Of a stretch of 64,000 nt of DNA, positions 26,670-42,213 are shown piece by piece. The notes beneath the pieces are model-generated. The model made no database searches. It was not told where the DNA came from and saw only the letters and a list, made by a program, of their open reading frames with translations. The stretch covers positions 124,001 through 188,000 of IMG/VR virus record IMGVR_UViG_3300049460_000128. The stretch is one strand, 5' to 3'. Both the position numbers and the translations under genes were made by a program. Each line of letters starts with the position of its first letter. Position 1 is the first letter of the stretch.

Positions 26670-28780
26670 TGCCAGTATCAATTGGAACTAAAATCTCGGC
26701 CGCATTCTATAATGCGATCCAGACAATCATTGCGGGTATCTTGGGTCCATCTGGATACAATGGCACCGTTACGAGTTCGCAAGTAACTGCGGGTTCCGTT
26801 GATACAGCAGCTCAATGGAACAAACTCCGTACAGACATCAATGCGTGTCGGACTATTCAGGCAGGTACACCTTTCACATCCACGGAATTGCCAGTCATTT
26901 CACTCGGTGCATTGATCAAGGCATCTGATGTCAATCTCTACGAATCAACCGCCAACACGGTTTTTGCCAACTATGGTGGTAACCTGGTATTGGTCAACGG
27001 TGTATTCACTGACACTCGTACTACAACATGGACTGGTACAATCGATAACGAAGTTGTGGTTAGCTTTGCTGACCTCGCTACGGCAAATGGCTTCTTCCAG
27101 AACAGTGGTGAAGTGCGTCTGAATCTCAGTCAACCAACTAACAACAATGCACAAGATGCGTTGTGGGTTTCTAACCTGAGTAATGTTGGTACGATCTCGT
27201 TCACAAATACGGCGACTACCCGTAGCGGTACGGCTGGTATCCCGTTGGCAGTGGGTTGGTCAACCATGACATCCAACTACCAGATGATCTTCAATGGTAA
27301 CCGACTGCACTCTGGTTCATCATACACCTACGTGTCAGTTGATGATTTGTATGTCTATGCAAAATTGAATGCAAGTGGCAATGGCATCGTGATCAAAACG
27401 GTTATGACCAATGGTGATAATGGCACTATCTCGGCATCTACCTTGGCATCGTATGGTGTCAAGAAACGTGTGACTGATACTACTCCATCATTCGCATTCC
27501 TGGCAAGCAATAACTTCAATGCAGCAGTGGCTGGTTCGGGTACAACTCCAACCATTACCGCTTATACGGCATCTGGTACAACATCGTCTGCCACTACACT
27601 GAATATCACCAGTAATGTGGCTGGTTATGCATTTGCGGCCGTATTGCCAGCAGCCAGTGCCGCTCCAACGGTTGCTACTTGGCCGACCTTGCAGAACAAC
27701 ATCAACGTGGTTACCAATACGCCAACTACCTTGACTGTTCCTTTGGCTTCACCCAGCACTGCTTACAAGGTCTACACCTTCGTGGAAGATGCATTTGGTA
27801 ATGCATCAGCGGTATCAAGTGTATCTGTTACCTCTGCGAGTGGCACCGGTGTTACTGCGGCTACAATTGGACAATTCTTCAAGACAACGCCATATACGGG
27901 CTCTGGTCCTGGAAGCAATTTGAATGTGTCCAATAACATCGACTTGCTGAACAACCCAGGTTTCATGATCATGCGTAATCGTGGCAGCACTGCGAACACC
28001 TTCGTGGCACTGCAACAAAACGTGGTGAATATGCCAGGTAATCCAGCATTCAAAATGACTGGCCCTGCTGGTCCAATTGCACCGTTCTGCGGGTTCACAT
28101 CGACGGGCTTTACTGTCAACAATAGCTATGGCAATTCCGTGTTCGTAAGCGAAAATGCGCAGAACTATATCACGTGGTCATTCCGTAAATCGACCAATTT
28201 TGTTGATATCGTGACTTGGACTGGTGATGGTGCAGCAAGTCGTAATATTGCTCATACCTTGACCCAACAGCCTGGTTTGGTGTTGATTAAGGCAAATACA
28301 ACTGGTGAAATCTATGCATCGCACCGTGGTACAGGTGCAAACAATGGCTGCGCAATCACATTGACTACTGCATCTGCGGCAACAAGTACAACCGTTGCTT
28401 CGACTGCATTTAGTACGGGCACGTTTGACGTCCTGCATGGTACTGGTGGTCGTGATACCAATACGCTTGGTACAACCTATGTTGCATTCGTGTTCGCACA
28501 TGATCCATCCGCAGGCGGTGTAATTCAAACTGGTCTGGCGAGTGGTAATGGTTTGGTCTCGCTTGGTTGGACACCACAATTCATCCTGTGCAAATCAGTC
28601 AATGACTCAGGCGCATGGGTTGTTTACGATGCGTCACGTGGTATTGGCCCAACGTCGAATCCGCTTCCACTCAATAACACCACCGCTGAAACAACCACCG
28701 CGTCTATTCAGAATGGTACAAATGGATTCACGATTGCTGGTGCAACAACACCAATGATCTGGATGGCGATTAGACAGTAA
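26669..28780 (+). CDS. tail fibre / receptor-binding protein
   Basis: Start at the TAATG overlap (MPVSIGTK); very Ser/Thr/Gly/Ala-rich; C-terminal YTGSG...NYITWSF...DIVTWTGDG...YVAFVFAHD fibre-head module. Confidence 0.7.
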   Translation: MPVSIGTKISAAFYNAIQTIIAGILGPSGYNGTVTSSQVTAGSVDTAAQWNKLRTDINACRTIQAGTPFTSTELPVISLGALIKASDVNLYESTANTVFANYGGNLVLVNGVFTDTRTTTWTGTIDNEVVVSFADLATANGFFQNSGEVRLNLSQPTNNNAQDALWVSNLSNVGTISFTNTATTRSGTAGIPLAVGWSTMTSNYQMIFNGNRLHSGSSYTYVSVDDLYVYAKLNASGNGIVIKTVMTNGDNGTISASTLASYGVKKRVTDTTPSFAFLASNNFNAAVAGSGTTPTITAYTASGTTSSATTLNITSNVAGYAFAAVLPAASAAPTVATWPTLQNNINVVTNTPTTLTVPLASPSTAYKVYTFVEDAFGNASAVSSVSVTSASGTGVTAATIGQFFKTTPYTGSGPGSNLNVSNNIDLLNNPGFMIMRNRGSTANTFVALQQNVVNMPGNPAFKMTGPAGPIAPFCGFTSTGFTVNNSYGNSVFVSENAQNYITWSFRKSTNFVDIVTWTGDGAASRNIAHTLTQQPGLVLIKANTTGEIYASHRGTGANNGCAITLTTASAATSTTVASTAFSTGTFDVLHGTGGRDTNTLGTTYVAFVFAHDPSAGGVIQTGLASGNGLVSLGWTPQFILCKSVNDSGAWVVYDASRGIGPTSNPLPLNNTTAETTTASIQNGTNGFTIAGATTPMIWMAIRQ

Positions 28781-28800
28781 CAAGTCAACACGCAACAGCA

Positions 28801-28827
28801 AGGCACACCTAGGTGTGCCTTTTCTTT
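28801..28827 (+). terminator. intrinsic terminator
   Basis: AGGCACAC-CTAG-GTGTGCCT followed by TTTCTTT. Confidence 0.85.
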
Positions 28828-28839
28828 GATTTATTAATG

Positions 28840-28847
28840 ACTAAATA
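28840..28847 (+). promoter_or_regulatory. putative late promoter (ACTAAATA)
   Basis: Same octamer as at 3897; lies just after the terminator and before gene 28873. Confidence 0.55.
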
Positions 28848-28872
28848 ATCAACATTTTATACCATAAGAGCT

Positions 28873-29742
28873 ATGACAATTAATTCAGGTTCGCCGGCCG
28901 CCGCCGCATTTTACAATTCAATTCAGTCAACCGTTGCGACGGTGCTGGGAACTGGGGGATACTATCAAACTCCTGCTAGTTCGCAACGAGTGACTGGTTC
29001 GTCAGTTACCGCGCTAGCCTGGACTCAGCTCCAAACTGATATCAATAAATGCCAAACGCATCAAACTGGTGCCGCTTTCTCAAATGCCAATTTACCCTCG
29101 GTTGTTGCTGGCGCATCAGTCAAGGCCTCTGACTTGAATTTGTATGAGACACAAGCTGGTGTCATCAATACAAATCGATATACGGCCAACGTGGCTAATA
29201 TGACCCTGACATCCAGTACATTGTCGATCGCCCGCGGCAGTATCTGGGGTAGTGGCAGCACATCAATTACAGCCGCATTCCAGGCAGACTGGGGCACGGC
29301 AGCAACCATGGCCGCATTCTTCAACACTGGTGGTGAAGTACGTTGGGTACTGGCACACAATAATATCGCGGGCCCACAGGATTCAAGTTGGCAGTCCCTA
29401 TTGAGTAGTTTGGGCCCATTTGATATTCATGGTGGCTCAGTGAACACAACCACGTCCACCACTGTGAAATTCCCGTTCAATAGTTTGACTACAACCTATC
29501 AGACTATTTTCAGCAAGACGAACACCACTGCCAGCTATACCGCCAATACGATCACCATTCAGGCAAGAATTAATGCGGCAGGCACGGGCATTAACGTGTC
29601 TGTGGTCTTGCTAGACGGTCACACAAACGCTTTCTACGACCAAGTGAGCAGTGGCACTACGCTGACGTGTAGTCACCTCAAATCGACTGTGGTGATGACT
29701 GGTATTACTTCACCAACCTACTCAGTACTTACGGCCTTCTAA
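28873..29742 (+). CDS. virion structural protein, paralogue of the N-terminal domain of 26669
   Basis: Shared blocks AAFYN.IQ, W..L.TDIN.C...Q.G, KASD.NLYE, FF...GEVR. Confidence 0.7.
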   Translation: MTINSGSPAAAAFYNSIQSTVATVLGTGGYYQTPASSQRVTGSSVTALAWTQLQTDINKCQTHQTGAAFSNANLPSVVAGASVKASDLNLYETQAGVINTNRYTANVANMTLTSSTLSIARGSIWGSGSTSITAAFQADWGTAATMAAFFNTGGEVRWVLAHNNIAGPQDSSWQSLLSSLGPFDIHGGSVNTTTSTTVKFPFNSLTTTYQTIFSKTNTTASYTANTITIQARINAAGTGINVSVVLLDGHTNAFYDQVSSGTTLTCSHLKSTVVMTGITSPTYSVLTAF

Positions 29743-30276: not shown

Positions 30277-30624
30277 ATGGACACTAGATTGGAACAAGCA
30301 CTAGAATACGCAAACTACAAAGTCACGGTATTCCAACAAAAAGAAAACCTCAAATTGCGCCTCGACAACATGTTGACATACGCGCACAACGGTGGCATTT
30401 TCAAGATCTCAGATACTCTCATTTCATTCGTTGACTCATTGCTGCGTCGCGATGTCGTGGAAGTTGTTCTGATTGATCAACGTGGAAATCCCGTAAAGGT
30501 AGTTGATCTCAAGGCTTTCCAGGAAACCATCTTCAGTCTGTATTTTGAAGCAACGAATGAATACCAGACGGAATTTGATAAACTGCGCAAAGCACGCTCA
30601 GTCAAGCAGGTGACCGGCGTATGA
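30277..30624 (+). CDS. hypothetical protein
   Basis: AGGAG SD, 115 aa, ATGA overlap with the next gene; CATAAGTA late-promoter variant at 30243-30250. Confidence 0.8.
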   Translation: MDTRLEQALEYANYKVTVFQQKENLKLRLDNMLTYAHNGGIFKISDTLISFVDSLLRRDVVEVVLIDQRGNPVKVVDLKAFQETIFSLYFEATNEYQTEFDKLRKARSVKQVTGV

Positions 30625-31523
30625 GCAAAGGCTTTTTGATCTACGCGCACAACAATGAAGAAGTCGACTATGGTAAGTTGGCTCTTTGCTGTGCGCTAAT
30701 GATCAAACGCAACCTAACGGTCAATGCGACATGTCTGGTAACCGATCAAGGCACACTTGACTGGCTGCGTGCCAGTCATACCGCCGAATTGATCGAGTAT
30801 GCGTTCGATCACATCAAGGTTGTCGACTACGCGACATCCCATGGTGGCAGCAAACAAAAGAAATTCCTCGATACCAGTTCCACTAGCAAAATTCTGAGCT
30901 GGCACAATGGCTCCCGTAATACAGCCTACGAACTGACTCCATTCGACGAAACAATTATCCTCGATAGTGATGTACTGGTACAAGATAAATCGTTCGATCT
31001 GGTATGGGGGAATGATGAAGATCTGATGGTCAATAATCAAGCTATTACACTGGAACACCAGAGTCCACGGCATACTGAAGTGCGTCTCGATACAATGGGA
31101 ATTCCCATGTATTGGGCAACCATGGTATATTTCCAGAAGACACCAAGGTCGAAAATGCTCTTTGATTTGGTCTCTCATATCAAGGCACAATACGCATACT
31201 ATCAATACGTATATGAGTTCCCGGGAAAATTATATCGTAATGATTATGCGTTCTCGATTGCAATTCACATGATGAATGGCTTTTTGGAAAATAACGAAGT
31301 GAAGAATTTCCCATGTGGTAAGATCCTCAGTAGTTTCGATACCGATGAATTAATTGGCGTGAAAGAAAATGAACTCACGTTCTTGGTGCAAGATAGCCAA
31401 CAAGAATGGCGATTCTTTGTCAACAATGTTCGAGGCATTACCGTTCATGCTATGAACAAATACGCATTGCTCCGCCATGCACCTACCATAATTGACATTT
31501 ACTATGACTCAACAAAGATTTAA
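30621..31523 (+). CDS. GT-A fold glycosyltransferase-like protein
   Basis: AYELTPFDETIILDSDVLV (DxD after a beta strand), YWATMVYF, RNDYAFSIA. Confidence 0.65.
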   Translation: MSKGFLIYAHNNEEVDYGKLALCCALMIKRNLTVNATCLVTDQGTLDWLRASHTAELIEYAFDHIKVVDYATSHGGSKQKKFLDTSSTSKILSWHNGSRNTAYELTPFDETIILDSDVLVQDKSFDLVWGNDEDLMVNNQAITLEHQSPRHTEVRLDTMGIPMYWATMVYFQKTPRSKMLFDLVSHIKAQYAYYQYVYEFPGKLYRNDYAFSIAIHMMNGFLENNEVKNFPCGKILSSFDTDELIGVKENELTFLVQDSQQEWRFFVNNVRGITVHAMNKYALLRHAPTIIDIYYDSTKI

Positions 31524-32373
31524 ACGTGATCGTGGTTTTTTCACCTTTGCACAAAATGGCACAACGGATTATATTCGTCTAGCCTATGCACTGGCATTGA
31601 GTCTTAAGGCTACTCAAGTGGAAGTTCCCTATTTGTCAATTGGTGTGACGCCAGGTACCGTGGTTGACGCCAAATACGCATGGGCGTTTGATGAGATAGT
31701 GGAAATTCCATGGGGTGATGCAGCAAAGGATGCTGACTGGAAACTCCAGAATGAATGGAAAGCATATCACATGACTCCCTACAGGGAAACAATTAAGCTC
31801 GACTGTGATATGCTGTTCACGACCAATGTTGATTCATGGTGGGAAACACTCAGTCAGCAAGATGTTTGGTTCGCAACCACCGCAACCACATATCGCAATG
31901 ATGTTGTGACCTCTGATTACTATCGTAAGACATTCACGGCAAATAAATTGCCAAATGTCTATACGGCATTCTGCTATTTCAAGCATTCAGATACCGCCTA
32001 CCAGTTATTTGATATGGCTGAAATCATTTATACCAACTGGGAGAAATTCACGTTTGAATTCATGGACGAACCTCGCCCCACTGAAGTAAGTACTGACGTG
32101 GTATTTGCACTCGCGGTCAAGCTTCTGGGTATAGAAGATGAATGTACGCGCCCTGGAACCTTCCCAAGCTTCACACACATGAAGACTCAATTGCAGGGTT
32201 GGAATGTGAATCAAGTTACTGAACACTGGACTGATCATATCGGCGTATATTTCACTGACGAATTGGAATTGAAAATTGGTCGCTACCTGCAATTGGCGCC
32301 AATCCATTATCATGTCAAGAGCTTCATTACCGACGAGATGATTTCCTTGTATGAGAAGAAGGTGATGCCTTGA
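31504..32373 (+). CDS. GT-A fold glycosyltransferase-like protein, paralogue of 30621
   Basis: AYHMTPYRETIKLDCDMLF, VYTAFCYF and STDVVFALA align with 30621. Confidence 0.65.
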   Translation: MTQQRFKRDRGFFTFAQNGTTDYIRLAYALALSLKATQVEVPYLSIGVTPGTVVDAKYAWAFDEIVEIPWGDAAKDADWKLQNEWKAYHMTPYRETIKLDCDMLFTTNVDSWWETLSQQDVWFATTATTYRNDVVTSDYYRKTFTANKLPNVYTAFCYFKHSDTAYQLFDMAEIIYTNWEKFTFEFMDEPRPTEVSTDVVFALAVKLLGIEDECTRPGTFPSFTHMKTQLQGWNVNQVTEHWTDHIGVYFTDELELKIGRYLQLAPIHYHVKSFITDEMISLYEKKVMP

Positions 32374-33322: not shown

Positions 33323-34065
33323 ATTATATAAAGCATTACGATATCTTGATAGCCCGTGCGATAGCCAGAAAGCTTTCTGGCTATTATGAAGTTCATCATA
33401 TAATTCCAAGGTGTATGGGTGGCACAAACAATGCTAATAATTTGGTCGAATTGACTCCAGCTGAACATTTTATAGCTCATTTATTACTCTGTCGCATATA
33501 TCCAAGTGTTGACGGGTTAGTGACCGCCGCATTTTTGATGTCTCACAAGGGAAAATATACAAACAAAGTATATGGTAAATTACGTGAACAATATGCTCAA
33601 ATTCGTAGTCATAATATGATTGGTGAACGTAATCATATGTATGGCAAAACACATGATATTGCAGCTCGAAATAAAGTATCACAAGCTAACACGGGGCGAA
33701 TACGATCAAGTTCGCATAGACAAGCCATAGCCAATGCACAGACTGGTAAAGTCATGAGTGCTTCAACCCGCAAATTGATAAGTGATGCTAATGTTGGTCG
33801 CATAGTGACTGATACAACAAAAGATAAATTATCCAAAGCATTGCAGGGTAAAATACGAAACCCTGATTCAATAGCAAAGCAAAGTATAACAAATACTGGT
33901 TCTGGTAATCCCAATTTTGGAAATGGCCAAGCCGTAACAGGAGCAAAGAACGGAATGTATGGTAAAAAATGGTATGTGAATGCAAAAGGTGAGCGTCGTG
34001 TGATGTTTCCCAATGACGAACGTTTACAACAAGATGACTGGCAAAATGGCAAGGAGTGGAAATAA
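33319..34065 (+). mobile_element. free-standing HNH homing endonuclease with NUMOD3-like repeats
   Basis: EVHHIIPRCMGGTNNANNLVELTPAEHFIAHLLL, then NHMYGKTH...KVSQANTG-type repeats; visibly more AT-rich than its neighbours. Confidence 0.9.
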
Positions 34066-34967
34066 TGGCATTAGAGAAATTCCCCATTACGACGTTTGAT
34101 GTTTTTTTCCTTAGCTACGATGAACCAAATGCAGAGAAGCATTGGGCTGACCTCCTGGACAAATGCCCTTGGGCTAAACGTGTACATGGCGTAAAGGGCT
34201 TTGATGCAGCACACCGCGAATGTGCCAATCAATCTGAAACCCCATGGTTCGTTACGGTCGATGCTGACAATATCGTGTTACCAGAATTCTTTGATATCGT
34301 GGTTGAACTTGATCCCGAGAATGCACCAAACCGCTGCTATTCCTGGAACGCAATCAATATGATGAACGGACTCATCTACGGCAATGGTGGCTTGAAATTG
34401 TGGTCGAAACAATTCGCTGCCAATATGCGTTCACATGAACTGTCGGATGATAAAGACGCGGTTGACTTCTGTTGGGAATCTGATTACAAGCAAGTTCATC
34501 GTACCTTCTCGGAAGTACACAACAATGGGTCAGCGTATCAGGCATTCCGGGTTGGCTATCGCGAAGGCATCAAACTCGCGTTAGATCGAGGCCAGCGCGT
34601 CGCACCAGAATTAATGAAGACGGTGTTGCATAACGTCAATCTTCGCAACCTACGCATATGGTCGTCAGTTGGTGCTGACGTTGAGCATGGTCTGTGGGCC
34701 ATATACGGCACTCGTATGGCATGGAGCCAAATGTGTGATCCAGATTACGACTTCACGGTCATTCGTGATTACGACTGGTTCAATGCCTTCTGGGAACAAA
34801 TCATTGGTGACTTGCCACCCGATCCCGTTGATCGTTTGAATGGATTGCCATTCTTCATCAATGTGTTGGGTGAGGATATTAAGAATAAAACGAAAATTGC
34901 TGTACCATTGCTTGATAGTGATACTAGCGAATTTTTCCGTGATACCTTCAAACTACGAAATGACTGA
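34065..34967 (+). CDS. GT-A (family 2-like) glycosyltransferase-like protein
   Basis: FDVFFLSYDEPNA, RVHGVKGFDAAH, FVTVDADN (DxD), NGLIYGNGGLKLW. Confidence 0.65.
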   Translation: MALEKFPITTFDVFFLSYDEPNAEKHWADLLDKCPWAKRVHGVKGFDAAHRECANQSETPWFVTVDADNIVLPEFFDIVVELDPENAPNRCYSWNAINMMNGLIYGNGGLKLWSKQFAANMRSHELSDDKDAVDFCWESDYKQVHRTFSEVHNNGSAYQAFRVGYREGIKLALDRGQRVAPELMKTVLHNVNLRNLRIWSSVGADVEHGLWAIYGTRMAWSQMCDPDYDFTVIRDYDWFNAFWEQIIGDLPPDPVDRLNGLPFFINVLGEDIKNKTKIAVPLLDSDTSEFFRDTFKLRND

Positions 34968-35283
34968 TTTCCAGGAAGCCAACCAGGTAATGATCCGGTT
35001 GGCTTCCTGCACTGTAGCACTCCGCCACGACTCAATACATGACTTCTTCGAGTCTGTATTCCTCCAAGCCTCACTCAACAAACAGTGGCGGGCTCCCTCG
35101 TATGCAAATGAAGGCCCAAAGGCAGATACCGATTATATCTTGGTATTCTTGCGTGACCTTCTGGCACTTCAATTCCCTGAACCACAAGACCCCAATCTCA
35201 TACAGATGCTGGCCGATGCCAGACTGTTGTATGAATGGGTCAGACCACAATACGAAGAAATTTTCGAGGTGCCATATGAATAA
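34960..35283 (+). CDS. small hypothetical protein, paralogue 1 (FPEPQDPNLIQM)
   Basis: Start MTDFQEAN overlaps the previous gene; shares a motif with the next two ORFs. Confidence 0.7.
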   Translation: MTDFQEANQVMIRLASCTVALRHDSIHDFFESVFLQASLNKQWRAPSYANEGPKADTDYILVFLRDLLALQFPEPQDPNLIQMLADARLLYEWVRPQYEEIFEVPYE

Positions 35284-35653
35284 TTTGTCCTCCACTTGCT
35301 ACCCTATTCGCCACAAGTCGATCGTGCCACTTCCCAATTACGCCATTGAATCGTTTGATGATGCAAACCAAGCCTATATCAAACTGATGGATCTTAAAGC
35401 AACTCTGTTGCTTGGGGCCAATAATCAATTGGTGCGTTTGGCTGTCCAGCAGGTGGTGATTAATGGCATGGTTGGTCACACGTTGGTGAAATGGCAATCT
35501 GCAATCATGGCACACATTCATGCAATAAAGGATCTTATGAATGCCCACTATCCAAATGACAACGATCCTGTGCTTATCGCCATGTTGGAATCTGCAAAGA
35601 TTTCGCATGATGAGATGACACAACTCTATAACGAGCATTGTCATGCTGACTGA
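35276..35653 (+). CDS. small hypothetical protein, paralogue 2 (YPNDNDPVLIAM)
   Basis: GAGGT SD before ATG 35276; shared motif. Confidence 0.7.
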   Translation: MNNLSSTCYPIRHKSIVPLPNYAIESFDDANQAYIKLMDLKATLLLGANNQLVRLAVQQVVINGMVGHTLVKWQSAIMAHIHAIKDLMNAHYPNDNDPVLIAMLESAKISHDEMTQLYNEHCHAD

Positions 35654-35879
35654 TGCCAATTTGATCTATGCGCGTCTGTGTGGAATTAAAGTCAATACTG
35701 CGGGTGGTGTTACCTTGATTGCACGTCATACCTTTATAGACCAAACTCACCAAGCATATATAGAGTATTTGGATACAATCGTGGATGGCGTATGGCCTGA
35801 ACCTGAAGATCCAGAACTACAAGATATGATTCGACGTGCAAATATACGTAAATCAATCTTACACGCATTCAACAAATAA
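35643..35879 (+). CDS. small hypothetical protein, paralogue 3 (WPEPEDPELQDM)
   Basis: Overlapping start; shared motif. Confidence 0.7.
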   Translation: MLTDANLIYARLCGIKVNTAGGVTLIARHTFIDQTHQAYIEYLDTIVDGVWPEPEDPELQDMIRRANIRKSILHAFNK

Positions 35880-35886
35880 GGAACAC

Positions 35887-37320
35887 ATGAGCGACACACC
35901 AAAATCAACAAATCAACTCAACATGGAAGCCATGATGGCCCGCATGGATGACGTAAAGGCTAAGAGCGGATCATCCACCATGTGTACTGCAAAATGGTTG
36001 CAAAGCACTGTCCATTTGAGTAATGGTCACACGCACTCATGTCACCACCCTTCTATTCACAAAATTCCAATCAGTGAAATTAAACGCAATCCGGCAGCAC
36101 TGCACAATACCGAGTTCAAGATCGAACAACGTAAAAAGATGCTGGCTGGCGAGCGTCCTGCTGAATGCCAATACTGCTGGAACATTGAAGACCTGCCAGG
36201 TAATCACATCAGTGATCGCACCTACAAGAGTGCTGACCTGGGCTGGTCGTATCCAAATTTGCAAGACGTGATCGAAAGCAAGGGTGGCGAGAATATCAAT
36301 CCGTCATACCTGGAAGTCTCCTTCGATTCAACGTGTAACATGAAATGCATGTATTGCACGCCTGACGTATCCAGCAAATGGATGGAAGAAAGTAAGCAGT
36401 ACGGGCATTATCCCAATACTTCCCATTATGTGGGTGGCATTGAATGGCTCAAGCAGCAGAACAAAATGCCAATTCCGCAAAGGGAAGACAATCCATACGT
36501 GGATGCGTTCTGGGAATGGTGGCCTGATCTGTACAAGAGTCTGCATACCTTCCGCATTACGGGCGGTGAACCCCTGTTGAGCAAAAATACCTGGCGTGTG
36601 TTGGAAGAGATCAAGAACAATCCACGTTCAGACTTGACTCTTGCTATCAATATCAACATGATGGCTCCTGATGATTTAATCGATCGTTTTATTCAGTATT
36701 ACAACGACATTGCACCTAACATCAAAGAGTTCCAGGTGTACACGAGTTGTGAAGCACATGGCAAACAAGCTGACTATATTCGCACAGGACTTGACTACGA
36801 TAAATTCATGGCAAATTGCCGTAAGTTCCTGTCCAGTACTGGTGCATGGTCTCGTTTGAATTTCATGATCACATTCAACGTATTGAGCCTCAGCACCTTC
36901 AAGGAATTCCTGACTGATATCTGGACTATGCGTACCGAATTCAATGAGTCGGATGCAATCAATCGTGTGCCTATGATGATCAACTATTTGCGCTGGCCGC
37001 AATTCCAAGATGTACGAGTAGCACCAGCGGAATACAAGGAAAAATACCTGAAGGTCATTAAAGATTACGTGGAAGCACACACGCGCAATACAAGCCCGAA
37101 TAAAGCCGGTAGGTTCTATTTGGAAGAAGTAGATCAGATCAATCGTTTGGGTGAGTATATGTTCGAACCCATGGAAGCTGGACACTTGAAAATTCAACAT
37201 AAAGACTTTGGTGCCTTCTATCCAGAATTCGATCGTCGTCGTAATGTGAATTTTGCTGAAACCTTCCCGGATCTGGTGGACTTCTTGAATCAATGTATCG
37301 AGGTAAACAATGAGCAGTAA
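35887..37320 (+). CDS. radical SAM enzyme with N-terminal twitch/SPASM-like domain (1 of 5)
   Basis: CNMKCMYC, ITGGEPLL; N-terminal CTAKW...HSCHHP...ECQYCW; TAAGGA SD. Confidence 0.9.
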   Translation: MSDTPKSTNQLNMEAMMARMDDVKAKSGSSTMCTAKWLQSTVHLSNGHTHSCHHPSIHKIPISEIKRNPAALHNTEFKIEQRKKMLAGERPAECQYCWNIEDLPGNHISDRTYKSADLGWSYPNLQDVIESKGGENINPSYLEVSFDSTCNMKCMYCTPDVSSKWMEESKQYGHYPNTSHYVGGIEWLKQQNKMPIPQREDNPYVDAFWEWWPDLYKSLHTFRITGGEPLLSKNTWRVLEEIKNNPRSDLTLAININMMAPDDLIDRFIQYYNDIAPNIKEFQVYTSCEAHGKQADYIRTGLDYDKFMANCRKFLSSTGAWSRLNFMITFNVLSLSTFKEFLTDIWTMRTEFNESDAINRVPMMINYLRWPQFQDVRVAPAEYKEKYLKVIKDYVEAHTRNTSPNKAGRFYLEEVDQINRLGEYMFEPMEAGHLKIQHKDFGAFYPEFDRRRNVNFAETFPDLVDFLNQCIEVNNEQ

Positions 37321-38641
37321 AAAAACAATCTTCATCAAAAATATTACGGAAAAACTCGATGCAGTTAGCCCATCAATGTGTTTGGCAAAGTGGACACAAA
37401 CGACCACTTATCTGAATACGGGCCATACCCATTCGTGTCACCATCCTTCAGTGCATAAGATCCCCACTGAAGGCTTGGACGAACATCCTGAATGGATTCA
37501 CAATACGCCATACAAGCAACAAATCCGTCAGCAGATGCTCGACGGCATTCGCCCACCTGAGTGCGACTATTGCTGGCGCATTGAAGACTTGCCAGGTGAC
37601 CATGCAAGCGACCGTATGCTGAAATCTGCGGCACACTGGTCAGCAGATCACTATGACCAAATTGTGAAGTCTGGCACTGGACCAAACTTTGCACCAACGA
37701 TGTTGGAAGTGTCATTCGAGACCACGTGTAATTTCGCATGTTCGTATTGCCTGCCTGAAGTATCAAGCAAGATCTACGGTGAGATTCAAGCACATGGTCC
37801 CTATCAGCTGTTCAGTCGTACCATTCATACAATCAGGGAAGATCGGTCGACAACTAAACTTGATCTGAATACTCCAGGCGACAATGTGTACATCGATGCG
37901 TTCTGGAAAGCTATCCCGCAATGGTGGTCAACCCTTGATACCTTCCGTATTACTGGTGGTGAACCTCTCTTGAGCAAACACACTTGGGGTATGATGGACT
38001 TCGTGGAAGCCAATGCCAACAAGGACTTGACCTTTGCGATCAATACGAACTTGGGTGTACCGGATCAGAAAATTGATCAGTTGATCAAACGTGTGAATGA
38101 GATTGAACCAAACCTTCGTCGCTTTACCGTCTATACAAGCGTGGAGGCGACTGGTAAGCAAGCTGAATACATTCGTTACGGCATGGACTATCCGAAGTTT
38201 ATGGCAAACGTTTCGCGTGTCTTGGACGAGACCAATGCTGACTTGGCATTGATGACGACAATCAACATTTTGAGCTATTCGACATTCACCGAAGCCATTC
38301 ATCAATTCCTGGCCTTGCGTGCTCGTTATCCTAATCGTGTGAATTTGTCATTCAACTATTTGCGGCACCCAGAGTGCTTAGATATGCGCAATCTGCCCGA
38401 AGTGTTGAAACAAAAATGGGCAGCAGAATTGTATCAATTGATGGAGCATCCGTTCATTAACCAATACGAAACTATGTCCATCTCTCGGGTAATTGACTAT
38501 ATGCTGAGCAGCGTTGAACCAGCAATCCTGGAGGTCAATCAAAAGGATCTCGTCATGTATGCCCGCGAACTCGACAAACGACGCGGCCTTGACTTCCCAG
38601 GCACTTTCCCTGACCTGTTTGCATTGTTGCCAGGAGTATGA
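37310..38641 (+). CDS. radical SAM enzyme with N-terminal twitch-like domain (2 of 5)
   Basis: CNFACSYC, ITGGEPLL; CLAKW...HSCHHP...ECDYCW; close paralogue of 35887. Confidence 0.9.
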   Translation: MSSKKTIFIKNITEKLDAVSPSMCLAKWTQTTTYLNTGHTHSCHHPSVHKIPTEGLDEHPEWIHNTPYKQQIRQQMLDGIRPPECDYCWRIEDLPGDHASDRMLKSAAHWSADHYDQIVKSGTGPNFAPTMLEVSFETTCNFACSYCLPEVSSKIYGEIQAHGPYQLFSRTIHTIREDRSTTKLDLNTPGDNVYIDAFWKAIPQWWSTLDTFRITGGEPLLSKHTWGMMDFVEANANKDLTFAINTNLGVPDQKIDQLIKRVNEIEPNLRRFTVYTSVEATGKQAEYIRYGMDYPKFMANVSRVLDETNADLALMTTINILSYSTFTEAIHQFLALRARYPNRVNLSFNYLRHPECLDMRNLPEVLKQKWAAELYQLMEHPFINQYETMSISRVIDYMLSSVEPAILEVNQKDLVMYARELDKRRGLDFPGTFPDLFALLPGV

Positions 38642-39864
38642 AAATGAAAACAAAAGATTTAAACAAGTCAACAATATGCGCGCAACCATGGTTTGGGATA
38701 ACCATCAAACCAGATGGAGTAGCGGGTATTTGTTGTGAGGTGACCGAAGAATTGACGGATATGAATATCCGCACACATTCATTCGCCGAAATGCAAAGTC
38801 ATCCTATTGTGACACGAATTAAAGATGAAATGCTGGCGGGCAAAAAACCAAAAGAATGCTGGCGCTGCTGGCAGAAAGAAGCACACGGCGCCCCAAGCTT
38901 ACGCCACACATTGAATAATAGGTATGCTGAGTATAACCCAACATCTGAGGAGTTTGATCCTGAGTTGATCATACCTCAAAATCTTGAAATTGTGCTAGGT
39001 AATCTGTGTCAACTGCGATGCGTTATGTGTCACCCTAGTCGCTCACGCAAAGTTGAAAACACTTTCAAGTACATCATGATTAAAGATATGCGTGATAGCT
39101 ATGAAGGACTGGTTTCCACTTTACCACCAGAGTTCGATACCTCGTGGGTTGAAGATGAACAGCTATGGGAAAGTATTGCAGATCAAGGTAAAGAGGCCCG
39201 TCGTATATACCTCAACGGCGGTGAGCCTCTATTGGCTAAGCATCATGAAAAGGTATTGGAAAAGCTTATTGCGAGTGGTAAAGCTAAAGACACCGAACTC
39301 ATATACAGTACCAATGGCTTTTTGTTAGAAGACGAGCATATGGCGTTATGGCAAGAATTCAAACAAGTCAATATCGCCCTGTCAATTGACGATTTGGATG
39401 ATCGTAACCACTTTATTCGTAATCCATCCAATTGGGTTAAGCTAATGGAATCGGTTGATAAGGTGGTTGAATGGCAAAAAGACCCCAAGAATAAAGAAAT
39501 TTACATAGGTATCTGGTGTGCCATCAACATGTTAAGCTTCGCATACTTGCCTGACTATTTGGAATTCTTTGCAACGAAATATCCATCAATTGTGATCAAA
39601 GGTTGGCGTGCAATCCAAACACCTGAGTACTTGAATCCAGGTAATTTGCCTCTCGAATTCAAGGAACAAGTGGCAAAGGAAATCAAGAATAAGATTGCCC
39701 AATACCCGCAATTTGCACACCTGCGCAGTGACATAGACCACATTGTAAATTCACCATCTAATGAGAAGTTACTAGATGACGGCATCGCATTTATGAAGAT
39801 GAACGCAGAATGCTATAAGGTTGACTTGAATACTACGTTTGATCGTATGGGTAAATTCTTATGA
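38638..39864 (+). CDS. radical SAM enzyme with N-terminal twitch-like domain (3 of 5)
   Basis: CQLRCVMC, LNGGEPLL, YSTNG; CAQPW...ICCE...ECWRCW. Confidence 0.9.
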   Translation: MKMKTKDLNKSTICAQPWFGITIKPDGVAGICCEVTEELTDMNIRTHSFAEMQSHPIVTRIKDEMLAGKKPKECWRCWQKEAHGAPSLRHTLNNRYAEYNPTSEEFDPELIIPQNLEIVLGNLCQLRCVMCHPSRSRKVENTFKYIMIKDMRDSYEGLVSTLPPEFDTSWVEDEQLWESIADQGKEARRIYLNGGEPLLAKHHEKVLEKLIASGKAKDTELIYSTNGFLLEDEHMALWQEFKQVNIALSIDDLDDRNHFIRNPSNWVKLMESVDKVVEWQKDPKNKEIYIGIWCAINMLSFAYLPDYLEFFATKYPSIVIKGWRAIQTPEYLNPGNLPLEFKEQVAKEIKNKIAQYPQFAHLRSDIDHIVNSPSNEKLLDDGIAFMKMNAECYKVDLNTTFDRMGKFL

Positions 39865-40937
39865 TTAAGCCAATCATATTTCACTCACATCGAATGACTC
39901 CGGCGCAAAATATACCCGAAGTGACGTGTCGTGTGCCATATCAAAGAATGTATGTCCAAGAGCAAGGCAACCTATATCACTGTTGCACGCATTGGATGCC
40001 ATATTCAATTGGTAATATCCGAGATTCGAGCATATTGGACTATTATCAATCAACTGAATGGGAGATGATATCCAGGACGTTTGAAGATGGCTCATTTAAA
40101 TATTGCAATGCTGATCTCTGCCCGTCACTTCAGACCTATAACACTATAGGGAGCTTGTCAACGGATCTTAGACCCATACATGAGTTGGAACAGATAAAAA
40201 GCGCAAAATATCTTGAAGTAACTTTGAATTACGACACGTCGTGTAATTTGGCATGTCCATCGTGTCGTAACGAATTGCAGTTAGTGAAGAATGATCCAGT
40301 GTTGCAAAACATACATGAAAAAACACTAGCATCAGTAACTGAATTGCTGGATAATGGATATAAAGTAACACTGGCGGTAACGAGTGCCGGCGACCCATTT
40401 GCCAGTAAACTATACATTGATGCGTTGCAAAACTACCATCATGACTCTGCAAATTACGATTACTTCATAGTCACAAACGGTACGTTATTGACTCAAAAGA
40501 AACTTGAGTGGGATAATATCCGCCATCGCACTCGAGGTTTTGCTATATCGGTAGATGCAGCCACAAAAGAAACGTATGCGAAGGTTAGACGGCTTGGTGA
40601 TTTTGATCAATTGACCGCCAATCTTAAAAACTTGAATGAACAGAAACGAAATGGCTTCTTCACACTGGATCCATATATCACTGTTAACTTCGTGATATCA
40701 TCATTGAATTTTAGAGAGCTCCCGCTGTTCATGGAGCAGATGCTGGAATTGGAACAGATCTCCGAAATCTGGTTGAACCTCATTGCTGACTGGGGCCATT
40801 TGAATAATTTCAACGACTATGCTATTTGGCGTGAAGATCACCCTGATCATGAAGAATTTCTAGCCGTCATGCAGCATCCATTGTTGAAGTCGAACAAACT
40901 CAAAGCCACCAATGCCATGCGTTTCATTCATGTCTAA
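39861..40937 (+). CDS. radical SAM enzyme with N-terminal twitch-like domain (4 of 5)
   Basis: CNLACPSC, SAGDPF in place of GGEP, VTNGTLL, ISVDAATKETYAKVR; CRVPY...HCC...YCNADLCP. Confidence 0.88.
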   Translation: MIKPIIFHSHRMTPAQNIPEVTCRVPYQRMYVQEQGNLYHCCTHWMPYSIGNIRDSSILDYYQSTEWEMISRTFEDGSFKYCNADLCPSLQTYNTIGSLSTDLRPIHELEQIKSAKYLEVTLNYDTSCNLACPSCRNELQLVKNDPVLQNIHEKTLASVTELLDNGYKVTLAVTSAGDPFASKLYIDALQNYHHDSANYDYFIVTNGTLLTQKKLEWDNIRHRTRGFAISVDAATKETYAKVRRLGDFDQLTANLKNLNEQKRNGFFTLDPYITVNFVISSLNFRELPLFMEQMLELEQISEIWLNLIADWGHLNNFNDYAIWREDHPDHEEFLAVMQHPLLKSNKLKATNAMRFIHV

Positions 40938-42129
40938 GATTACTTGTTTGGCGCCCTGGGTCCATGGGTTTGCCACTAATAAACTAAAGGGACTCTGCTG
41001 CATTGCAGGCAACATGCAGCCGTTCGAAGCACATTCCGAATTCTGGAATGGAGACTACATGCGTGAGGTTAGGACTAAATTCCTAGCTGGCAAAACAATA
41101 CCTGAATGCTCGCTGTGTTTCGCCCACAGTAATAGGGAAGAAGACAACCGATACTATCAGGTCTTTGATCGAGACTATGGGCACCTAGTCGATGACATCA
41201 AAACATCAACTGATGCTGAAACCGGAGCAACTACGTTTCAGCCAGTGTACTTGGATTATCGACACTCGCTATGCAATTTGAAGTGCAAGACATGTTCGTC
41301 ACATTCGTCTAGTTCAATAGCATCAACATCACGTATGATCCCCATAGTGTCATACAAGTCAGTATTCGCAGATCACCTATCGGACTTGAAAGCCGTCATC
41401 ACCGACAAGACACAGAAGATATATTGGGCTGGTGGTGAACCGTTAATGAGCCCAGTGCATTGGGAAATACTTGAACATATGAAAGACAGACAGTTTTTCA
41501 ATGCTCATATGACGTACAATACAAACGCCACCAAATTAACCAATGACGAAATGTTTGATCAAGCGGTCAATTATTTCAAAATGTTCAACTCGCATGTGGG
41601 AATAAGTGTTGACGGTATAGACGAAGTCAACGATTATATTAGAGCAGGTTCAGATTGGAAATCCATTAATGCCACGATCAAAAAGTTATTGGGAGCATTG
41701 GGACGTCATGTCATCAGTTTAGACATAACCATGACTAACCTGACCTTCCTCCAATTGCCGGCGATAATTCAATACGCAATTGATACTGGATTGGAACATT
41801 GCTATTTCAAAAACATGATTGAATTTGAAGGTGACGTTCATGATGGGCAAATATACGATGACAATACGTACTTGAGTGTCAGCCTGATTTCACCCGCAAC
41901 ATTCAACACCATATCCAATGAGGTGACTGCAATACTAGCAAATTCAACTCTCCAAACAAACATCAGTTCGTTGTTGGTCTTCATTCAGAATCAATGCATT
42001 GGGCGAGAATTTACTGACCACGAACGGCAGGCAATTGTGGACTTTGAACAACGTCACAATGACACTCTATCACTGTATGACATAGTTCGTCACCAGGCGC
42101 TGCCTGGCACGGTCGTTGACACTCTTTGA
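40930..42129 (+). CDS. radical SAM enzyme with N-terminal twitch-like domain (5 of 5)
   Basis: CNLKCKTC, WAGGEPLM, YNTNAT, ISVDG; CLAPW...LCCI...ECSLC. Confidence 0.88.
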   Translation: MSKITCLAPWVHGFATNKLKGLCCIAGNMQPFEAHSEFWNGDYMREVRTKFLAGKTIPECSLCFAHSNREEDNRYYQVFDRDYGHLVDDIKTSTDAETGATTFQPVYLDYRHSLCNLKCKTCSSHSSSSIASTSRMIPIVSYKSVFADHLSDLKAVITDKTQKIYWAGGEPLMSPVHWEILEHMKDRQFFNAHMTYNTNATKLTNDEMFDQAVNYFKMFNSHVGISVDGIDEVNDYIRAGSDWKSINATIKKLLGALGRHVISLDITMTNLTFLQLPAIIQYAIDTGLEHCYFKNMIEFEGDVHDGQIYDDNTYLSVSLISPATFNTISNEVTAILANSTLQTNISSLLVFIQNQCIGREFTDHERQAIVDFEQRHNDTLSLYDIVRHQALPGTVVDTL

Positions 42130-42170
42130 CGTTGGATGCACCCATGAGCCAAGTCATGGCATACAGTCGT

Positions 42171-42200: not shown

Positions 42201-42213
42201 GTGATGAAGTTGC

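What the first reader, a model, noticed from the sequence alone, without database searches (positions are those of the whole stretch)
35887..42129. Tandem array of five inverted-architecture (N-terminal twitch) radical SAM genes with a divergent distal end
Seen: each protein carries its auxiliary Cys cluster before the CxxxCxxC core, whereas SPASM/twitch domains are usually C-terminal. Genes 1 and 2 are close paralogues in which HSCHHP replaces the CC of genes 3-5. Gene 4 has SAGDPF instead of GGEP and a C-x4-CP end to its auxiliary domain. By eye, genes 3-5 use more ATA/AGA/CTA codons than genes 1-2 and the structural genes. Inference: at least three sub-types perform different steps, with a conserved core (1-2) and exchangeable distal cassettes (3-5) that could diversify the product between phages.
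Basis: partly seen in the sequence, partly recalled or inferred. Interest (0 to 1): 0.62.

Follow-up and report, generated by a model that had tools for sequence, protein, structure and literature searches.

The report
Phage radical SAM array beside glycosyltransferases
A jumbo phage carries five back-to-back iron-sulfur "radical SAM" enzyme genes with an unusual reversed domain order, attached to a tail-fibre and glycosyltransferase cassette found in many uncultured phages. They most likely tailor sugars by chemistry that nobody has yet characterised.

Summary
Five co-directional, overlapping genes (35887-42129) each carry an N-terminal 4- or 5-Cys domain before the CX3CX2C core. Four pass NCBIfam NF033640 (N-terminal twitch radical SAM). 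Gene 4 has the same layout but scores below the cut-off. A profile of the N-terminal domain matches only the C-terminal twitch domain of BtrN among solved structures, so the "inverted architecture" is real.

The codon claim holds: genes 1-2 have 0 of 920 ATA/AGA/CTA codons and genes 3-5 have 53 of 1171 (p=3e-14).

Comparison with 80 viral loci shows a conserved cassette:
- tail fibres
- two glycogenin-like (GT8) genes
- a GT-A-fold gene
- a gene-1-type radical SAM gene
- 0-7 further N-twitch radical SAM genes, which differ between lineages

A relative with 79% gene-1 identity and conserved flanks carries different downstream genes. The same enzymes form arrays in Bdellovibrionota genomes, often beside GT2, GT4 and ABC-2 exporter genes.

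Best reading (confidence about 0.45): a sugar-tailoring radical SAM set coupled to phage glycosyltransferases, with gene 1 as the conserved core and the rest as exchangeable. The main rival is protein or peptide modification. The family is catalogued and such arrays have been remarked on, but the function is unknown.

The parts
25695..29742 (+). Tail-fibre genes (25695-26669, 26594-28780, 28873-29742) that open the conserved block
   Evidence: PHROG tail fibre hits. Relatives of the first gene carry collagen repeats and a Peptidase_G2 chaperone domain. Conserved as clusters 2 and 4 in 55-57 of 81 loci.
30621..31523 (+). GT8 (glycogenin-like) glycosyltransferase, first of two tandem paralogues (cluster 3)
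   Evidence: A profile of 31 members hits glycogenin-1 in the PDB at E=1.5e-7, covering the nucleotide-binding region and the DxD motif. Present in 54 of 79 viral loci.
31492..32373 (+). GT8-like glycosyltransferase, second paralogue (cluster 3)
   Evidence: Belongs to the same cluster and profile as the first paralogue. 78% identical to its counterpart in L167.
34056..34967 (+). GT-A-fold, DxD-containing putative glycosyltransferase (cluster 1), the conserved partner immediately upstream of the array
   Evidence: AF2 model with pLDDT 94. Foldseek hits are all GT-A glycosyltransferases: WrtF, SunS, PBCV-1 A64R, TarS. VIA Z 8-10 over residues 7-173, though nucleotidyltransferases of the same fold are also listed. 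D69 and D71 are nearly invariant. Lies within three genes upstream of the first radical SAM gene in 53 of 79 viral loci.
34960..35879 (+). Three small paralogous ORFs (34960-35283, 35291-35653, 35643-35879) inserted between the GT-A-like gene and G1; role unknown and membership in the system doubtful
   Evidence: Shared motifs DANQxYIxL and PEPxDPxLxxM. No Pfam or PHROG hit for the second and third ORFs; the first was not scanned. Absent from relatives L008, L009 and L167.
35887..37320 (+). G1: 4-Cys N-terminal-twitch radical SAM enzyme, the conserved first gene of the array
   Evidence: NF033640 at 318.8 bits. AF2 pLDDT 95.4. The core matches SkfB at Z 13.5, BlsE at 12.6 and MoaA at 12.2. All seven cluster cysteines are invariant in 66 homologues. 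More than 7,800 homologues. Takes position 1 in nearly all arrays.
37310..38641 (+). G2: 4-Cys N-twitch radical SAM enzyme, paralogue of G1
   Evidence: NF033640 at 303.1 bits. 44% identical to G1. Orthologue at 60% identity in L008 only.
38638..39864 (+). G3: CC-class (5-Cys) N-twitch radical SAM enzyme
   Evidence: NF033640 at 275.4 bits. Pfam SPASM hits residues 14-78. Partial orthologue at 55% identity at the end of the L008 contig. Rare-codon fraction 2.9%.
39861..40937 (+). G4: divergent CC-class N-twitch radical SAM enzyme (SAGDPF in place of GGEP; twitch ends C-x4-CP)
   Evidence: NF033640 at only 49.5 bits, but Pfam SPASM 32.7 bits at residues 23-83 and Radical_SAM 31.4 bits. Small family of 54 word-search hits; the best is 59% identical over 99% of the length, and one is a Halobacteriovorax marinus protein.
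40912..42129 (+). G5: CC-class N-twitch radical SAM enzyme, last gene of the array
   Evidence: NF033640 at 211.4 bits. Falls in the clade of terminal array genes of other phages. No close relative in viral contigs; the best is 27% identical. Rare-codon fraction 5.4%.
51491..52168 (+). Second, shorter paralogue of the GT-A-like gene, at the far edge of the variable island
   Evidence: 44% identical to a cluster-1 member. 59% identical to the gene at the equivalent place in L167, next to ThyA and DHFR homologues in both genomes.

Best explanation
The five genes encode two-cluster radical SAM enzymes. Each has one SAM-cleaving [4Fe-4S] site on CX3CX2C, plus one auxiliary cluster held by a BtrN-type twitch domain that sits in front of the catalytic barrel instead of behind it.

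They form the variable tail of a conserved phage cassette at the end of the baseplate and tail-fibre module: tail fibres, two GT8 (glycogenin-like) glycosyltransferases, a GT-A-fold glycosyltransferase, then the radical SAM genes.

The most likely function is sugar tailoring. Each enzyme would abstract a hydrogen atom from a sugar with the 5'-deoxyadenosyl radical. The sugar could be a nucleotide-sugar or a glycan already attached to its acceptor. The enzyme would then oxidise, epimerise or otherwise rework it, as the twitch enzymes BtrN, NeoN and HygY do on aminoglycoside sugars.

G1, always paired with the GT-A-like gene, would carry out the common first step. G2-G5 would add lineage-specific steps, so related phages would end up with different glycans. 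The glycan would probably sit on the tail fibres or virion, or alternatively on the host envelope.

Shown: the architecture, family membership, homology of the twitch domain to BtrN, the synteny with glycosyltransferases, the variability between relatives, and the codon contrast.

Inferred: that the substrates are sugars, the chemistry, and the acceptor.

A speculative detail concerns the residue after the second cluster cysteine. It is an invariant Cys in the CC class and an invariant His in the G1 homologue alignment (His or Tyr across the wider 4-Cys class). This difference could separate epimerase-like from dehydrogenase-like outcomes.
For: Family and fold:
- NF033640 scores are above the cut-off for four of the five genes.
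- The radical SAM core has Z 11-13.5 to SkfB, BlsE, MoaA, DesII and anSME.
- The N-domain profile hits only the BtrN twitch in the PDB. It aligns the first Cys of CC to BtrN C187 and CxxC to C232/C235.
- The G1 N-domain matches the CC-class N-domain with hhalign probability 98%.

Context in phages:
- 72 of 79 viral loci hold at least one glycosyltransferase family.
- 53 have the GT-A-like gene just upstream of the first radical SAM gene.
- 48 hold an NAD epimerase/dehydratase, carbamoyltransferase, methyltransferase or DUF6071 gene.
- Cluster 3 is GT8/glycogenin-like and cluster 1 has a GT-A fold.

Context in bacteria:
- The best 77 genome loci are almost all Bdellovibrionota, with arrays of up to 10 genes.
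- The most frequent named neighbours are GT4, GT2 and ABC-2 exporter genes; an unannotated 312-aa family is about as frequent.
- The Halobacteriovorax marinus locus holds GT1, ABC2_membrane, ABC_tran and epimerase genes.

Variability. Codon contrast.

Precedents from papers:
- BtrN is a 2-DOIA dehydrogenase. NeoN is an epimerase with a Cys hydrogen donor. HygY is a twitch epimerase turned into a dehydrogenase by one Cys mutation (PMC10991966 and its reference list).
- Mycobacteriophage virions are glycosylated by phage glycosyltransferases (cited in PMC12619734).
- Radical SAM cassettes vary within the pelagimyophage host-recognition cluster (PMC7029224).
Against: - No substrate has been identified, and no biochemistry exists for any NF033640 member that I could find.
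- Most characterised SPASM/twitch enzymes act on peptides, and the best structural match is the sactisynthase SkfB.
- Some Bdellovibrionota loci also carry PqqD-like, M16 peptidase and Asp/Asn-hydroxylase-like genes.
- Only 37 of 71 bacterial loci show a recognised glycan gene within 10 kb.
- The GT-A-like assignment rests on a fold match of Z 8-10 that also lists nucleotidyltransferases.
- The window itself has no NDP-sugar synthesis gene next to the array. The nearest epimerase/dehydratase is about 50 kb away in the genome.
Confidence: 0.45

Rival explanations
1. The enzymes are protein or peptide maturases. They would install cross-links, epimerisations or oxidations directly on tail-fibre or other structural proteins, or on small peptides, as SPASM/twitch enzymes do in RiPP pathways. 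The neighbouring glycosyltransferases would decorate the same protein.
For: - The top structural matches include SkfB, SuiB, CteB and anSME.
- The array lies inside the tail-fibre module.
- In Halobacteriovorax marinus a G1-type gene (36% identical) is followed by a PqqD-family gene and a Peptidase_S74 chaperone-domain gene.
- PqqD-like genes occur in 7 of the 71 bacterial-looking Bdellovibrionota loci (10 hits in all, including the H. marinus locus) and M16 peptidase genes in 6.
- A Bdellovibrio isolate has a 1965-aa fibre-like protein with an intramolecular chaperone domain two genes upstream of a G1-type gene.
- SunS-type peptide glycosyltransferases are among the best fold matches of the upstream gene.
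- Three small paralogous ORFs lie just before G1.
Against: - No PqqD/RRE homologue was found in the window or in any of the 80 viral loci.
- None of the five proteins has an RRE domain hit.
- The small ORFs are absent from close relatives that keep G1.
- Chaperone-domain proteins accompany the arrays in only 2 bacterial and 6 viral loci.
- The universally conserved partners are glycosyltransferases.
- The only solved protein that matches the N-domain by sequence, BtrN, acts on a sugar-like aminocyclitol.
Confidence: 0.25
2. The cassette modifies phage DNA or nucleotides. The glycosyltransferases would attach sugars to hypermodified bases, and the radical SAM enzymes would tailor them or act on nucleotides in a viperin-like way to evade host defences.
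For: - Viperin is among the fold matches, Z 11.4.
- The variable island ends beside helicase, ThyA-like and DHFR-like genes, and a paralogue of the GT-A-like gene sits next to ThyA in both the window and L167.
- Phage glycosyltransferases are known to hypermodify DNA with diverse glycans (Pyle et al. 2024, cited in PMC12619734).
Against: - Viperin family scores are 17-38 bits against a cut-off of 180.
- The cassette is linked to tail-fibre genes in about 55 loci of very different phages.
- Bacterial homologues lie beside exporters and GT2/GT4 genes, not DNA-modification genes.
Confidence: 0.08
3. G3-G5 are recently acquired, redundant or decaying paralogues without distinct roles, and only G1 (and perhaps G2) matters.
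For: - G3-G5 have lower GC and 3-5% rare codons, similar to the homing endonuclease and other accessory genes.
- Close relatives do without them.
- G4 falls below the family cut-off and has an altered SAM-binding motif.
Against: - All three reading frames are intact, with complete CX3CX2C and twitch cysteines.
- The CC pair is invariant across 50 CC-class sequences.
- Each has full-length homologues elsewhere: G3 at 55% in L008, G4 at 59% over 99% of its length.
- Translationally coupled overlaps argue for co-expression.
Confidence: 0.07

Closest known systems
NCBIfam NF033640, N_Twi_rSAM (twitch domain-containing radical SAM protein)
   Same: G1, G2, G3 and G5 score 211-319 bits against a cut-off of 170 and align end to end with the model. 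They have the same N-terminal twitch followed by the radical SAM core.
   Different: G4 scores only 49.5 bits. The family is a curated sequence model without an assigned function; I found no paper that names it.
BtrN (butirosin 2-deoxy-scyllo-inosamine dehydrogenase), the founding twitch radical SAM enzyme
   Same: The auxiliary-cluster domain is homologous (E=6.6e-5) and the ligand cysteines align with BtrN C187, C232 and C235. The spacing is similar, C-x18-C-x41-C-x2-C in G1. One auxiliary cluster is expected, as in BtrN.
   Different: In BtrN the twitch follows the barrel; here it precedes it. These proteins are also 100-200 residues longer, with a helical C-terminal region, and show no significant sequence match to BtrN outside the twitch.
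NeoN and HygY, twitch radical SAM sugar epimerases
   Same: Twitch enzymes acting on sugars in which a single cysteine decides between epimerase and dehydrogenase outcomes (PMC10991966 and its reference to Besandre et al. 2021). The CC class carries an extra invariant Cys next to a cluster ligand.
   Different: No sequence or structure comparison with NeoN or HygY was made here. The analogy for the extra Cys is an idea, not a result.
SPASM-domain peptide maturases (anSME, SkfB, SuiB, CteB)
   Same: The radical SAM core fold is shared, Z 10.9-13.5. Pfam SPASM matches the N-terminal domain of G3 and G4.
   Different: There are only 4-5 cysteines, so the seven-Cys two-cluster SPASM motif is absent. 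The domain is N-terminal, and there is no RRE.
Radical SAM gene clusters noted in phage genomes: eight in the structural cluster of Aeromonas phage 332-Vera (PMC12390700), twelve in a T4-like marine viral genome (PMC5332604), cassettes in the pelagimyophage host-recognition cluster (PMC7029224)
   Same: Multiple radical SAM genes sit inside or next to baseplate and tail-fibre genes and vary between near relatives. That is what the 80 viral loci show.
   Different: Those papers only remark on the genes. I could not compare sequences with 332-Vera; the phage collection gave only RsoM2USA and distant Vibrio phage hits.
Virus-encoded virion glycosylation (mycobacteriophage capsid and tail-tube glycans; PBCV-1 A64R capsid glycosyltransferase)
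   Same: Glycosyltransferase genes are placed with structural genes, and A64R is among the fold matches of the gene upstream of the array.
   Different: No radical SAM enzymes are known in those systems. Glycosylation of this phage's virion has not been shown.

Membership tests
NF033640 N_Twi_rSAM | HMM score at or above the curated cut-off of 170 bits | tested here: met
   G1 318.8, G2 303.1, G3 275.4 and G5 211.4 bits (repeated on the genome). G4 does not meet it (49.5 bits), so G4 is filed as a divergent relative and not a member.
NF033640 N_Twi_rSAM | Twitch-type auxiliary Cys domain placed N-terminal to the CX3CX2C core | tested here: met
   Cys positions for all five proteins. Pfam SPASM hits at residues 14-78 (G3) and 23-83 (G4). 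BtrN twitch match. hhalign probability of 98% links the two classes.
Radical SAM superfamily | CX3CX2C motif, SAM-binding GGE-type motif and partial TIM-barrel fold | tested here: met
   CX3CX2C is present in all five. GGEP is present in four and AGDP in G4. PF04055 hits all five: above its cut-off for G3, G4 and G5, just below for G1 and G2. The G1 model has Z 13.5 to SkfB and 12.2 to MoaA.
SPASM domain (two auxiliary clusters) | Seven-cysteine motif including CX2CX5CX3C | tested here: not met
   There are only 4 (G1, G2) or 5 (G3-G5) cysteines before the core, and no CX2CX5CX3C. Hence a twitch, not a full SPASM.
BtrN-type twitch dehydrogenases | Twitch domain C-terminal to the barrel, and overall sequence similarity | tested here: not met
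   Only the twitch segment matches, BtrN residues 181-238. The full-length G1 profile finds no PDB sequence at E<=0.01. The domain order is reversed.
MoaA / QueE / NrdG activase (housekeeping radical SAM) | Score above the equivalog cut-offs | tested here: not met
   Best scores are MoaA 40.1 against 284, QueE 15.2 against 260, and NrdG 24.3 against 131.
RiPP radical SAM maturases | RRE/PqqD recognition domain in the enzyme or a neighbouring gene, plus a precursor peptide | tested here: not met
   No PqqD or RRE hit in the five proteins. A jackhmmer search with a PqqD protein found none in the window or in the viral loci, only in 10 Bdellovibrionota loci. The small upstream ORFs are not conserved.
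Prokaryotic viperin | Score above the NF038283 cut-off (180 bits) | tested here: not met
   17.2-37.8 bits.
Glycan-tailoring pathway (functional class) | Demonstrated sugar substrate or glycan product | not testable with these tools
   Only gene-neighbourhood evidence is available.

The most novel reading that the evidence does not exclude
Arrays of domain-permuted twitch radical SAM enzymes, coupled to GT8 and GT-A glycosyltransferases, form a widespread and uncharacterised pathway. In this reading the pathway builds radically tailored, lineage-specific glycans on phage tail fibres, and on surface structures of predatory Bdellovibrionota. Swapping array members would then be a way to diversify or mask the host- or prey-recognition apparatus. 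The His-versus-Cys switch next to the auxiliary-cluster ligand would set the chemistry, dehydrogenation versus epimerisation.
Probability: 0.3. Interest if true: 0.8.

Novelty: new member of a known kind. Interest (0 to 1): 0.6.

Why it matters
The gene-1 type alone has more than 7,800 homologues in public data and 226 matching viral loci. Only one cultured phage in the GenBank-derived collection (Ralstonia phage RsoM2USA) carries the glycosyltransferase plus gene-1 pair, and no member has a known reaction.

The cassette sits in the part of phage genomes that decides host recognition, and it changes between close relatives. If these enzymes tailor sugars, they would add new radical carbohydrate chemistry. 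They would also point to a layer of tail-fibre or surface-glycan diversity that genome annotation currently misses.

The link to Bdellovibrionota suggests that phages and bacterial predators share a common toolkit.

Tried and rejected
Searches that found nothing useful:
- Megablast of the whole array against 50,697 phage records: no match.
- Full-length G1 profile against PDB sequences: nothing at E<=0.01.
- G1-type N-domain profile against the PDB: only chance-level hits. The link to BtrN therefore runs through the CC-class profile and hhalign.
- Profile of the GT-A-like family against PDB sequences: nothing meaningful. Its assignment rests on the fold.
- Cluster 7, a family interspersed in many arrays: no Pfam or PDB hit. 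There is only a weak Atlas lead (0.80) to GT10 fucosyltransferases, so it is left unassigned.
- A 312-aa family adjacent to bacterial arrays is unrelated to the viral GT-A-like family (hhalign probability 0.15%) and has only a weak nucleotidyltransferase hint.
- Promoter and terminator scan of 33000-44500: no more sites than in shuffles.
- Close relatives of G4 and G5 in viral contigs: none found for G4, and the best for G5 is 27% identical.

Ideas considered and set aside:
- The three small upstream ORFs as precursor peptides: rejected as a general explanation because relatives lack them.
- A general association with intramolecular-chaperone fibre proteins in bacteria: only 2 loci.
- The two multiple alignments disagree on which Cys of CC matches C52 of G1. 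The profile-profile and BtrN alignments favour the first.

Full report
**Source and gene layout**

The window is bases 124001-188000 of a 296.6 kb IMG/VR virus record, a jumbo phage that CheckV rates 70% complete.

The flagged stretch holds five + strand ORFs:
- G1, 35887-37320
- G2, 37310-38641
- G3, 38638-39864
- G4, 39861-40937
- G5, 40912-42129

Neighbouring genes overlap by 11, 4, 4 and 26 nt, so the five look like one translationally coupled unit.

**Observation check**

- Each protein has its auxiliary cysteines before the CX3CX2C core.
- G1 and G2 have four such cysteines, with the motif HSCHHP.
- G3-G5 have five, with a CC pair.
- G4 has SAGDPF where the others have GGEP, and its auxiliary domain ends C-x4-CP.

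G1 and G2 are 44% identical. Every other pair is about 20% identical.

The codon impression is also correct and statistically strong.
- G1 and G2 contain no ATA, AGA or CTA codon in 920 codons. G3-G5 contain 53 in 1171 (Fisher p=3e-14). The genome-wide fraction is 1.24%.
- G3-G5 are also 3-5 points lower in GC.
- In this genome the baseplate, fibre and other conserved genes have very few of these codons. The homing endonuclease and many small accessory genes have 3-7%.

**Family and architecture**

- NCBIfam NF033640, "twitch domain-containing radical SAM protein" (N_Twi_rSAM), matches G1, G2, G3 and G5 end to end. Scores are 211-319 bits against a cut-off of 170. G4 reaches only 49.5 bits.
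- Pfam places its SPASM model on the N-terminus of G4 (above threshold) and G3 (just below).
- Housekeeping families (MoaA, QueE, NrdG activase) and viperin score far below their cut-offs.
- A profile of the N-terminal domain from 50 CC-class sequences finds only one solved protein, BtrN. It matches BtrN's C-terminal twitch, residues 181-238, at E=6.6e-5. The first Cys of the CC pair aligns with BtrN C187 and the CxxC with C232/C235.
- The G1-type N-domain does not reach BtrN directly. It does align to the CC-class domain with hhalign probability 98%. That alignment puts G1 C52 on the first Cys of CC and the invariant H53 on the second.
- The AlphaFold model of G1 is confident (pLDDT 95.4). 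Its core matches SkfB, BlsE, MoaA, SuiB, DesII, viperin and anSME at Z 11-13.5.

So these are radical SAM enzymes with one BtrN-type auxiliary cluster domain moved to the front.

**Surroundings in the window**

Upstream lie the following genes:
- a baseplate hub, 8189-10123
- a baseplate wedge, 10583-13912
- a 3662-aa ORF
- tail-fibre genes

I fetched 80 viral loci with G1 and clustered their ORFs. A strongly conserved order appeared:
- a large protein
- cluster 6
- a tail fibre (cluster 2, with collagen repeats and a chaperone domain in relatives)
- a tail fibre (cluster 4)
- a 104-aa protein
- two tandem copies of cluster 3
- a 115-aa protein
- cluster 1
- the radical SAM genes

Two of these clusters could be assigned.
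- Cluster 3 (window 30621-31523 and 31492-32373) is a GT8, glycogenin-like glycosyltransferase. Its profile hits glycogenin-1 at E=1.5e-7 across the nucleotide-binding region and DxD motif.
- Cluster 1 (window 34056-34967, directly before the array) gives a confident model (pLDDT 94). Its N-terminal 160 residues have the GT-A fold. Foldseek hits are all glycosyltransferases, including SunS, WrtF, TarS and the PBCV-1 capsid glycosyltransferase. VIA Z is 8-10, with nucleotidyltransferases of the same fold also listed. It has nearly invariant aspartates in a DxD arrangement.

Further genes scattered after or among the radical SAM genes in relatives are:
- NAD-dependent epimerase/dehydratases
- carbamoyltransferases
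- GT7 plus lectin-fold and GT2 glycosyltransferases
- a methyltransferase
- DUF6071
- several unassigned families

In numbers, 72 of 79 viral loci hold at least one of the glycosyltransferase families. Cluster 1 lies within three genes upstream of the first radical SAM gene in 53 loci.

**The arrays themselves**

Viral loci carry between one and eight N-twitch genes; some counts are cut by contig ends.

A tree of 231 distinct array proteins separates two classes.
- The 4-Cys class has the motif SC[H/Y]H and fills positions 1 and 2.
- The CC class fills the later positions.

G1 falls with the position-1 genes of the nearest relatives, and G2 beside it. G3, G4 and G5 fall in three different CC clades, with G4 on a long branch next to the eighth gene of L039.

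The array composition varies in a structured way.
- In one group of phages (L051, L066, L075, L078, L083, L084) a five-gene array keeps the same order of clades. Arrays are therefore stable within lineages.
- L167 has a G1 orthologue at 79% identity, and its fibre, GT8-like and GT-A-like genes are 49-78% identical. To the right it has the same paralogue of the GT-A-like gene, plus ThyA and DHFR homologues. Between those flanks it carries a different 4-Cys gene, one unrelated CC gene, a 298-aa gene, an unrelated FG-GAP gene and a carbamoyltransferase.
- L009-L011 (64-72% G1 identity) also lack G3-G5.
- L008 keeps G2 (60%) and the start of a G3 orthologue (55%) before its contig ends.

Together with the codon contrast, this supports a conserved core and a replaceable remainder. 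The core is the GT-A-like gene plus G1, rather than G1 plus G2.

**Distribution**

- G1 has more than 7,800 homologues in the word-based search, nearly all metagenomic. Many lie on contigs of 200-540 kb.
- Among deposited phage genomes, only Ralstonia jumbo phage RsoM2USA has the GT-A-like plus G1 pair, at 46% and 52% identity. It shows the same local order, including an epimerase and two GT8-like genes. KVP40-like vibriophages have a distant N-twitch gene.
- A scan of species-representative genomes with the G1 profile gave 214 loci. The best 77 are almost all Bdellovibrionota (Bdellovibrio, Bacteriovorax, Halobacteriovorax and relatives), some on megabase contigs, with arrays of up to ten genes.
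- In those bacterial loci the most frequent named neighbours are GT4, GT2 and ABC-2 type exporter genes, with an unannotated 312-aa family about as frequent. Carbamoyltransferase, epimerase and PMT_2 genes also occur.
- The Halobacteriovorax marinus locus shows GT1, two N-SPASM radical SAM genes, ABC2_membrane, ABC_tran, GT1 and an epimerase close together.

**Function**

The consistent company of glycosyltransferases and sugar-nucleotide enzymes, in phages and in bacteria, points to sugar tailoring as the most likely job. So does the specific homology of the auxiliary domain to BtrN, and the fact that known twitch enzymes on small molecules (BtrN, NeoN, HygY, BlsE) act on sugars.

G1 would be the common step tied to the GT-A-like enzyme. 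The other enzymes would be lineage-specific steps.

The phage cassette has no exporter or flippase and is embedded in the fibre module. Glycogenin-like and SunS/A64R-like enzymes glycosylate proteins. I therefore favour a glycan on the fibres or virion over remodelling of the host envelope, but this preference is inference only.

The invariant His (G1 type) versus invariant Cys (CC class) next to a cluster ligand is a concrete handle for experiments. It recalls the single cysteine that separates epimerase from dehydrogenase activity in HygY and NeoN (PMC10991966 and its references).

**Rival explanations**

The main rival is direct modification of proteins or peptides.
- Most SPASM/twitch enzymes do this, and SkfB is the best fold match.
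- Some Bdellovibrionota loci carry PqqD-like, M16 peptidase and hydroxylase-like genes.
- In H. marinus a G1-type gene is followed by PqqD and a Peptidase_S74 gene.
- In a Bdellovibrio isolate a 1965-aa fibre-like protein with an intramolecular chaperone domain lies two genes upstream.

Against this rival, no PqqD homologue occurs in the window or in any viral locus. The small ORFs before G1 are not conserved. The chaperone-domain association is rare.

A DNA or nucleotide role, and simple redundancy of G3-G5, are less likely for the reasons given under the rival explanations.

**Literature**

I found no paper on the family itself. Three papers remark on the phenomenon without explaining it:
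- Eight radical SAM genes inside the structural cluster of Aeromonas giant phage 332-Vera, called highly unusual (PMC12390700).
- Twelve in a T4-like marine viral genome (PMC5332604).
- Radical SAM cassettes as the difference between two otherwise similar host-recognition clusters of pelagimyophages, which are also rich in glycosyltransferases (PMC7029224).

**Verdict**

- The finding is real.
- The evolutionary reading is largely borne out, with the corrections above.
- The genes are new members of a catalogued but functionally unknown family.

What this analysis adds:
- the link to a conserved GT8 / GT-A / fibre cassette
- the BtrN homology of the permuted domain
- the two-class (His versus Cys) split tied to array position
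- the Bdellovibrionota connection

Limits:
- No biochemical evidence exists.
- I could not inspect model coordinates.
- Family-scan and structure-prediction quotas were exhausted, so several accessory families remain unnamed.

Noticed in passing
window 42214-44046 (-): A 610-aa protein with two DUF4214 domains, an FG-GAP repeat and a lipoprotein-like N-terminus. Its GC is 0.53 against about 0.45 around it, and it has almost no rare codons, so it looks foreign, perhaps host-derived. Relative L167 has an unrelated FG-GAP gene at the same position.
   Followed up: partly
window 33319-34065 (+): An HNH/NUMOD3 homing endonuclease (GC 0.38, 6% ATA/AGA/CTA) is inserted between the GT8-like block and the GT-A-like gene. 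It is absent at this place in relatives.
   Followed up: partly
window 34960-35879 (+): Three small paralogous ORFs (107, 120 and 78 aa) share the motifs DANQxYIxL and PEPxDPxLxxM. The second and third have no family hit; the first was not scanned. They are specific to this genome among the relatives examined.
   Followed up: partly
window 13912-24900 (+): A single 3662-aa ORF directly after the baseplate wedge gene. It is 41% identical to a 3486-aa ORF at the same place in L167. It may correspond to the giant VrlC-type protein described next to tail fibres in marine myophages.
   Followed up: no
window 29742-30224 (+): A histidine phosphatase (His_Phos_1) gene sits inside the fibre and glycosyltransferase block. 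It could act on a sugar phosphate.
   Followed up: no
window 39861-40937 (G4): The public record's own gene call for G4 is only 217 aa, yet a 364-aa homologue aligns over 99% of the 358-aa ORF at 59% identity. The deposited call appears truncated and loses the twitch domain.
   Followed up: partly
window 51491-54075: A short paralogue of the GT-A-like gene lies next to a 380-aa thymidylate-synthase-like gene and a DHFR-like gene. The same trio is conserved in L167. The ThyA homologue is unusually long.
   Followed up: partly
genome 208-214 kb (L165), outside the window: GTP cyclohydrolase I, a phosphoribosyltransferase, a 339-aa radical SAM gene and an NAD epimerase/GDP-mannose-dehydratase-like gene lie together. 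This may be a deazapurine or sugar pathway.
   Followed up: partly
genome 255936-256092, outside the window: The genome's only two tRNA genes both have anticodon CAT. One could be an ATA-reading tRNA-Ile2, which would bear on the ATA-rich accessory genes. Not tested.
   Followed up: no
L095 1938-7835 and L166 13780-15989: In a Bdellovibrio isolate, a 1965-aa protein with a tailspike/MYRF-type intramolecular chaperone domain lies two genes before a G1-type radical SAM gene. In Halobacteriovorax marinus, a G1-type gene is followed by PqqD-like and Peptidase_S74 genes.
   Followed up: partly
L009-L011, L023, L024 and others (cluster 21): A different 358-aa radical SAM family without the N-terminal twitch accompanies the arrays in eight viral loci, usually next to a second copy of the GT-A-like gene.
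   Followed up: no
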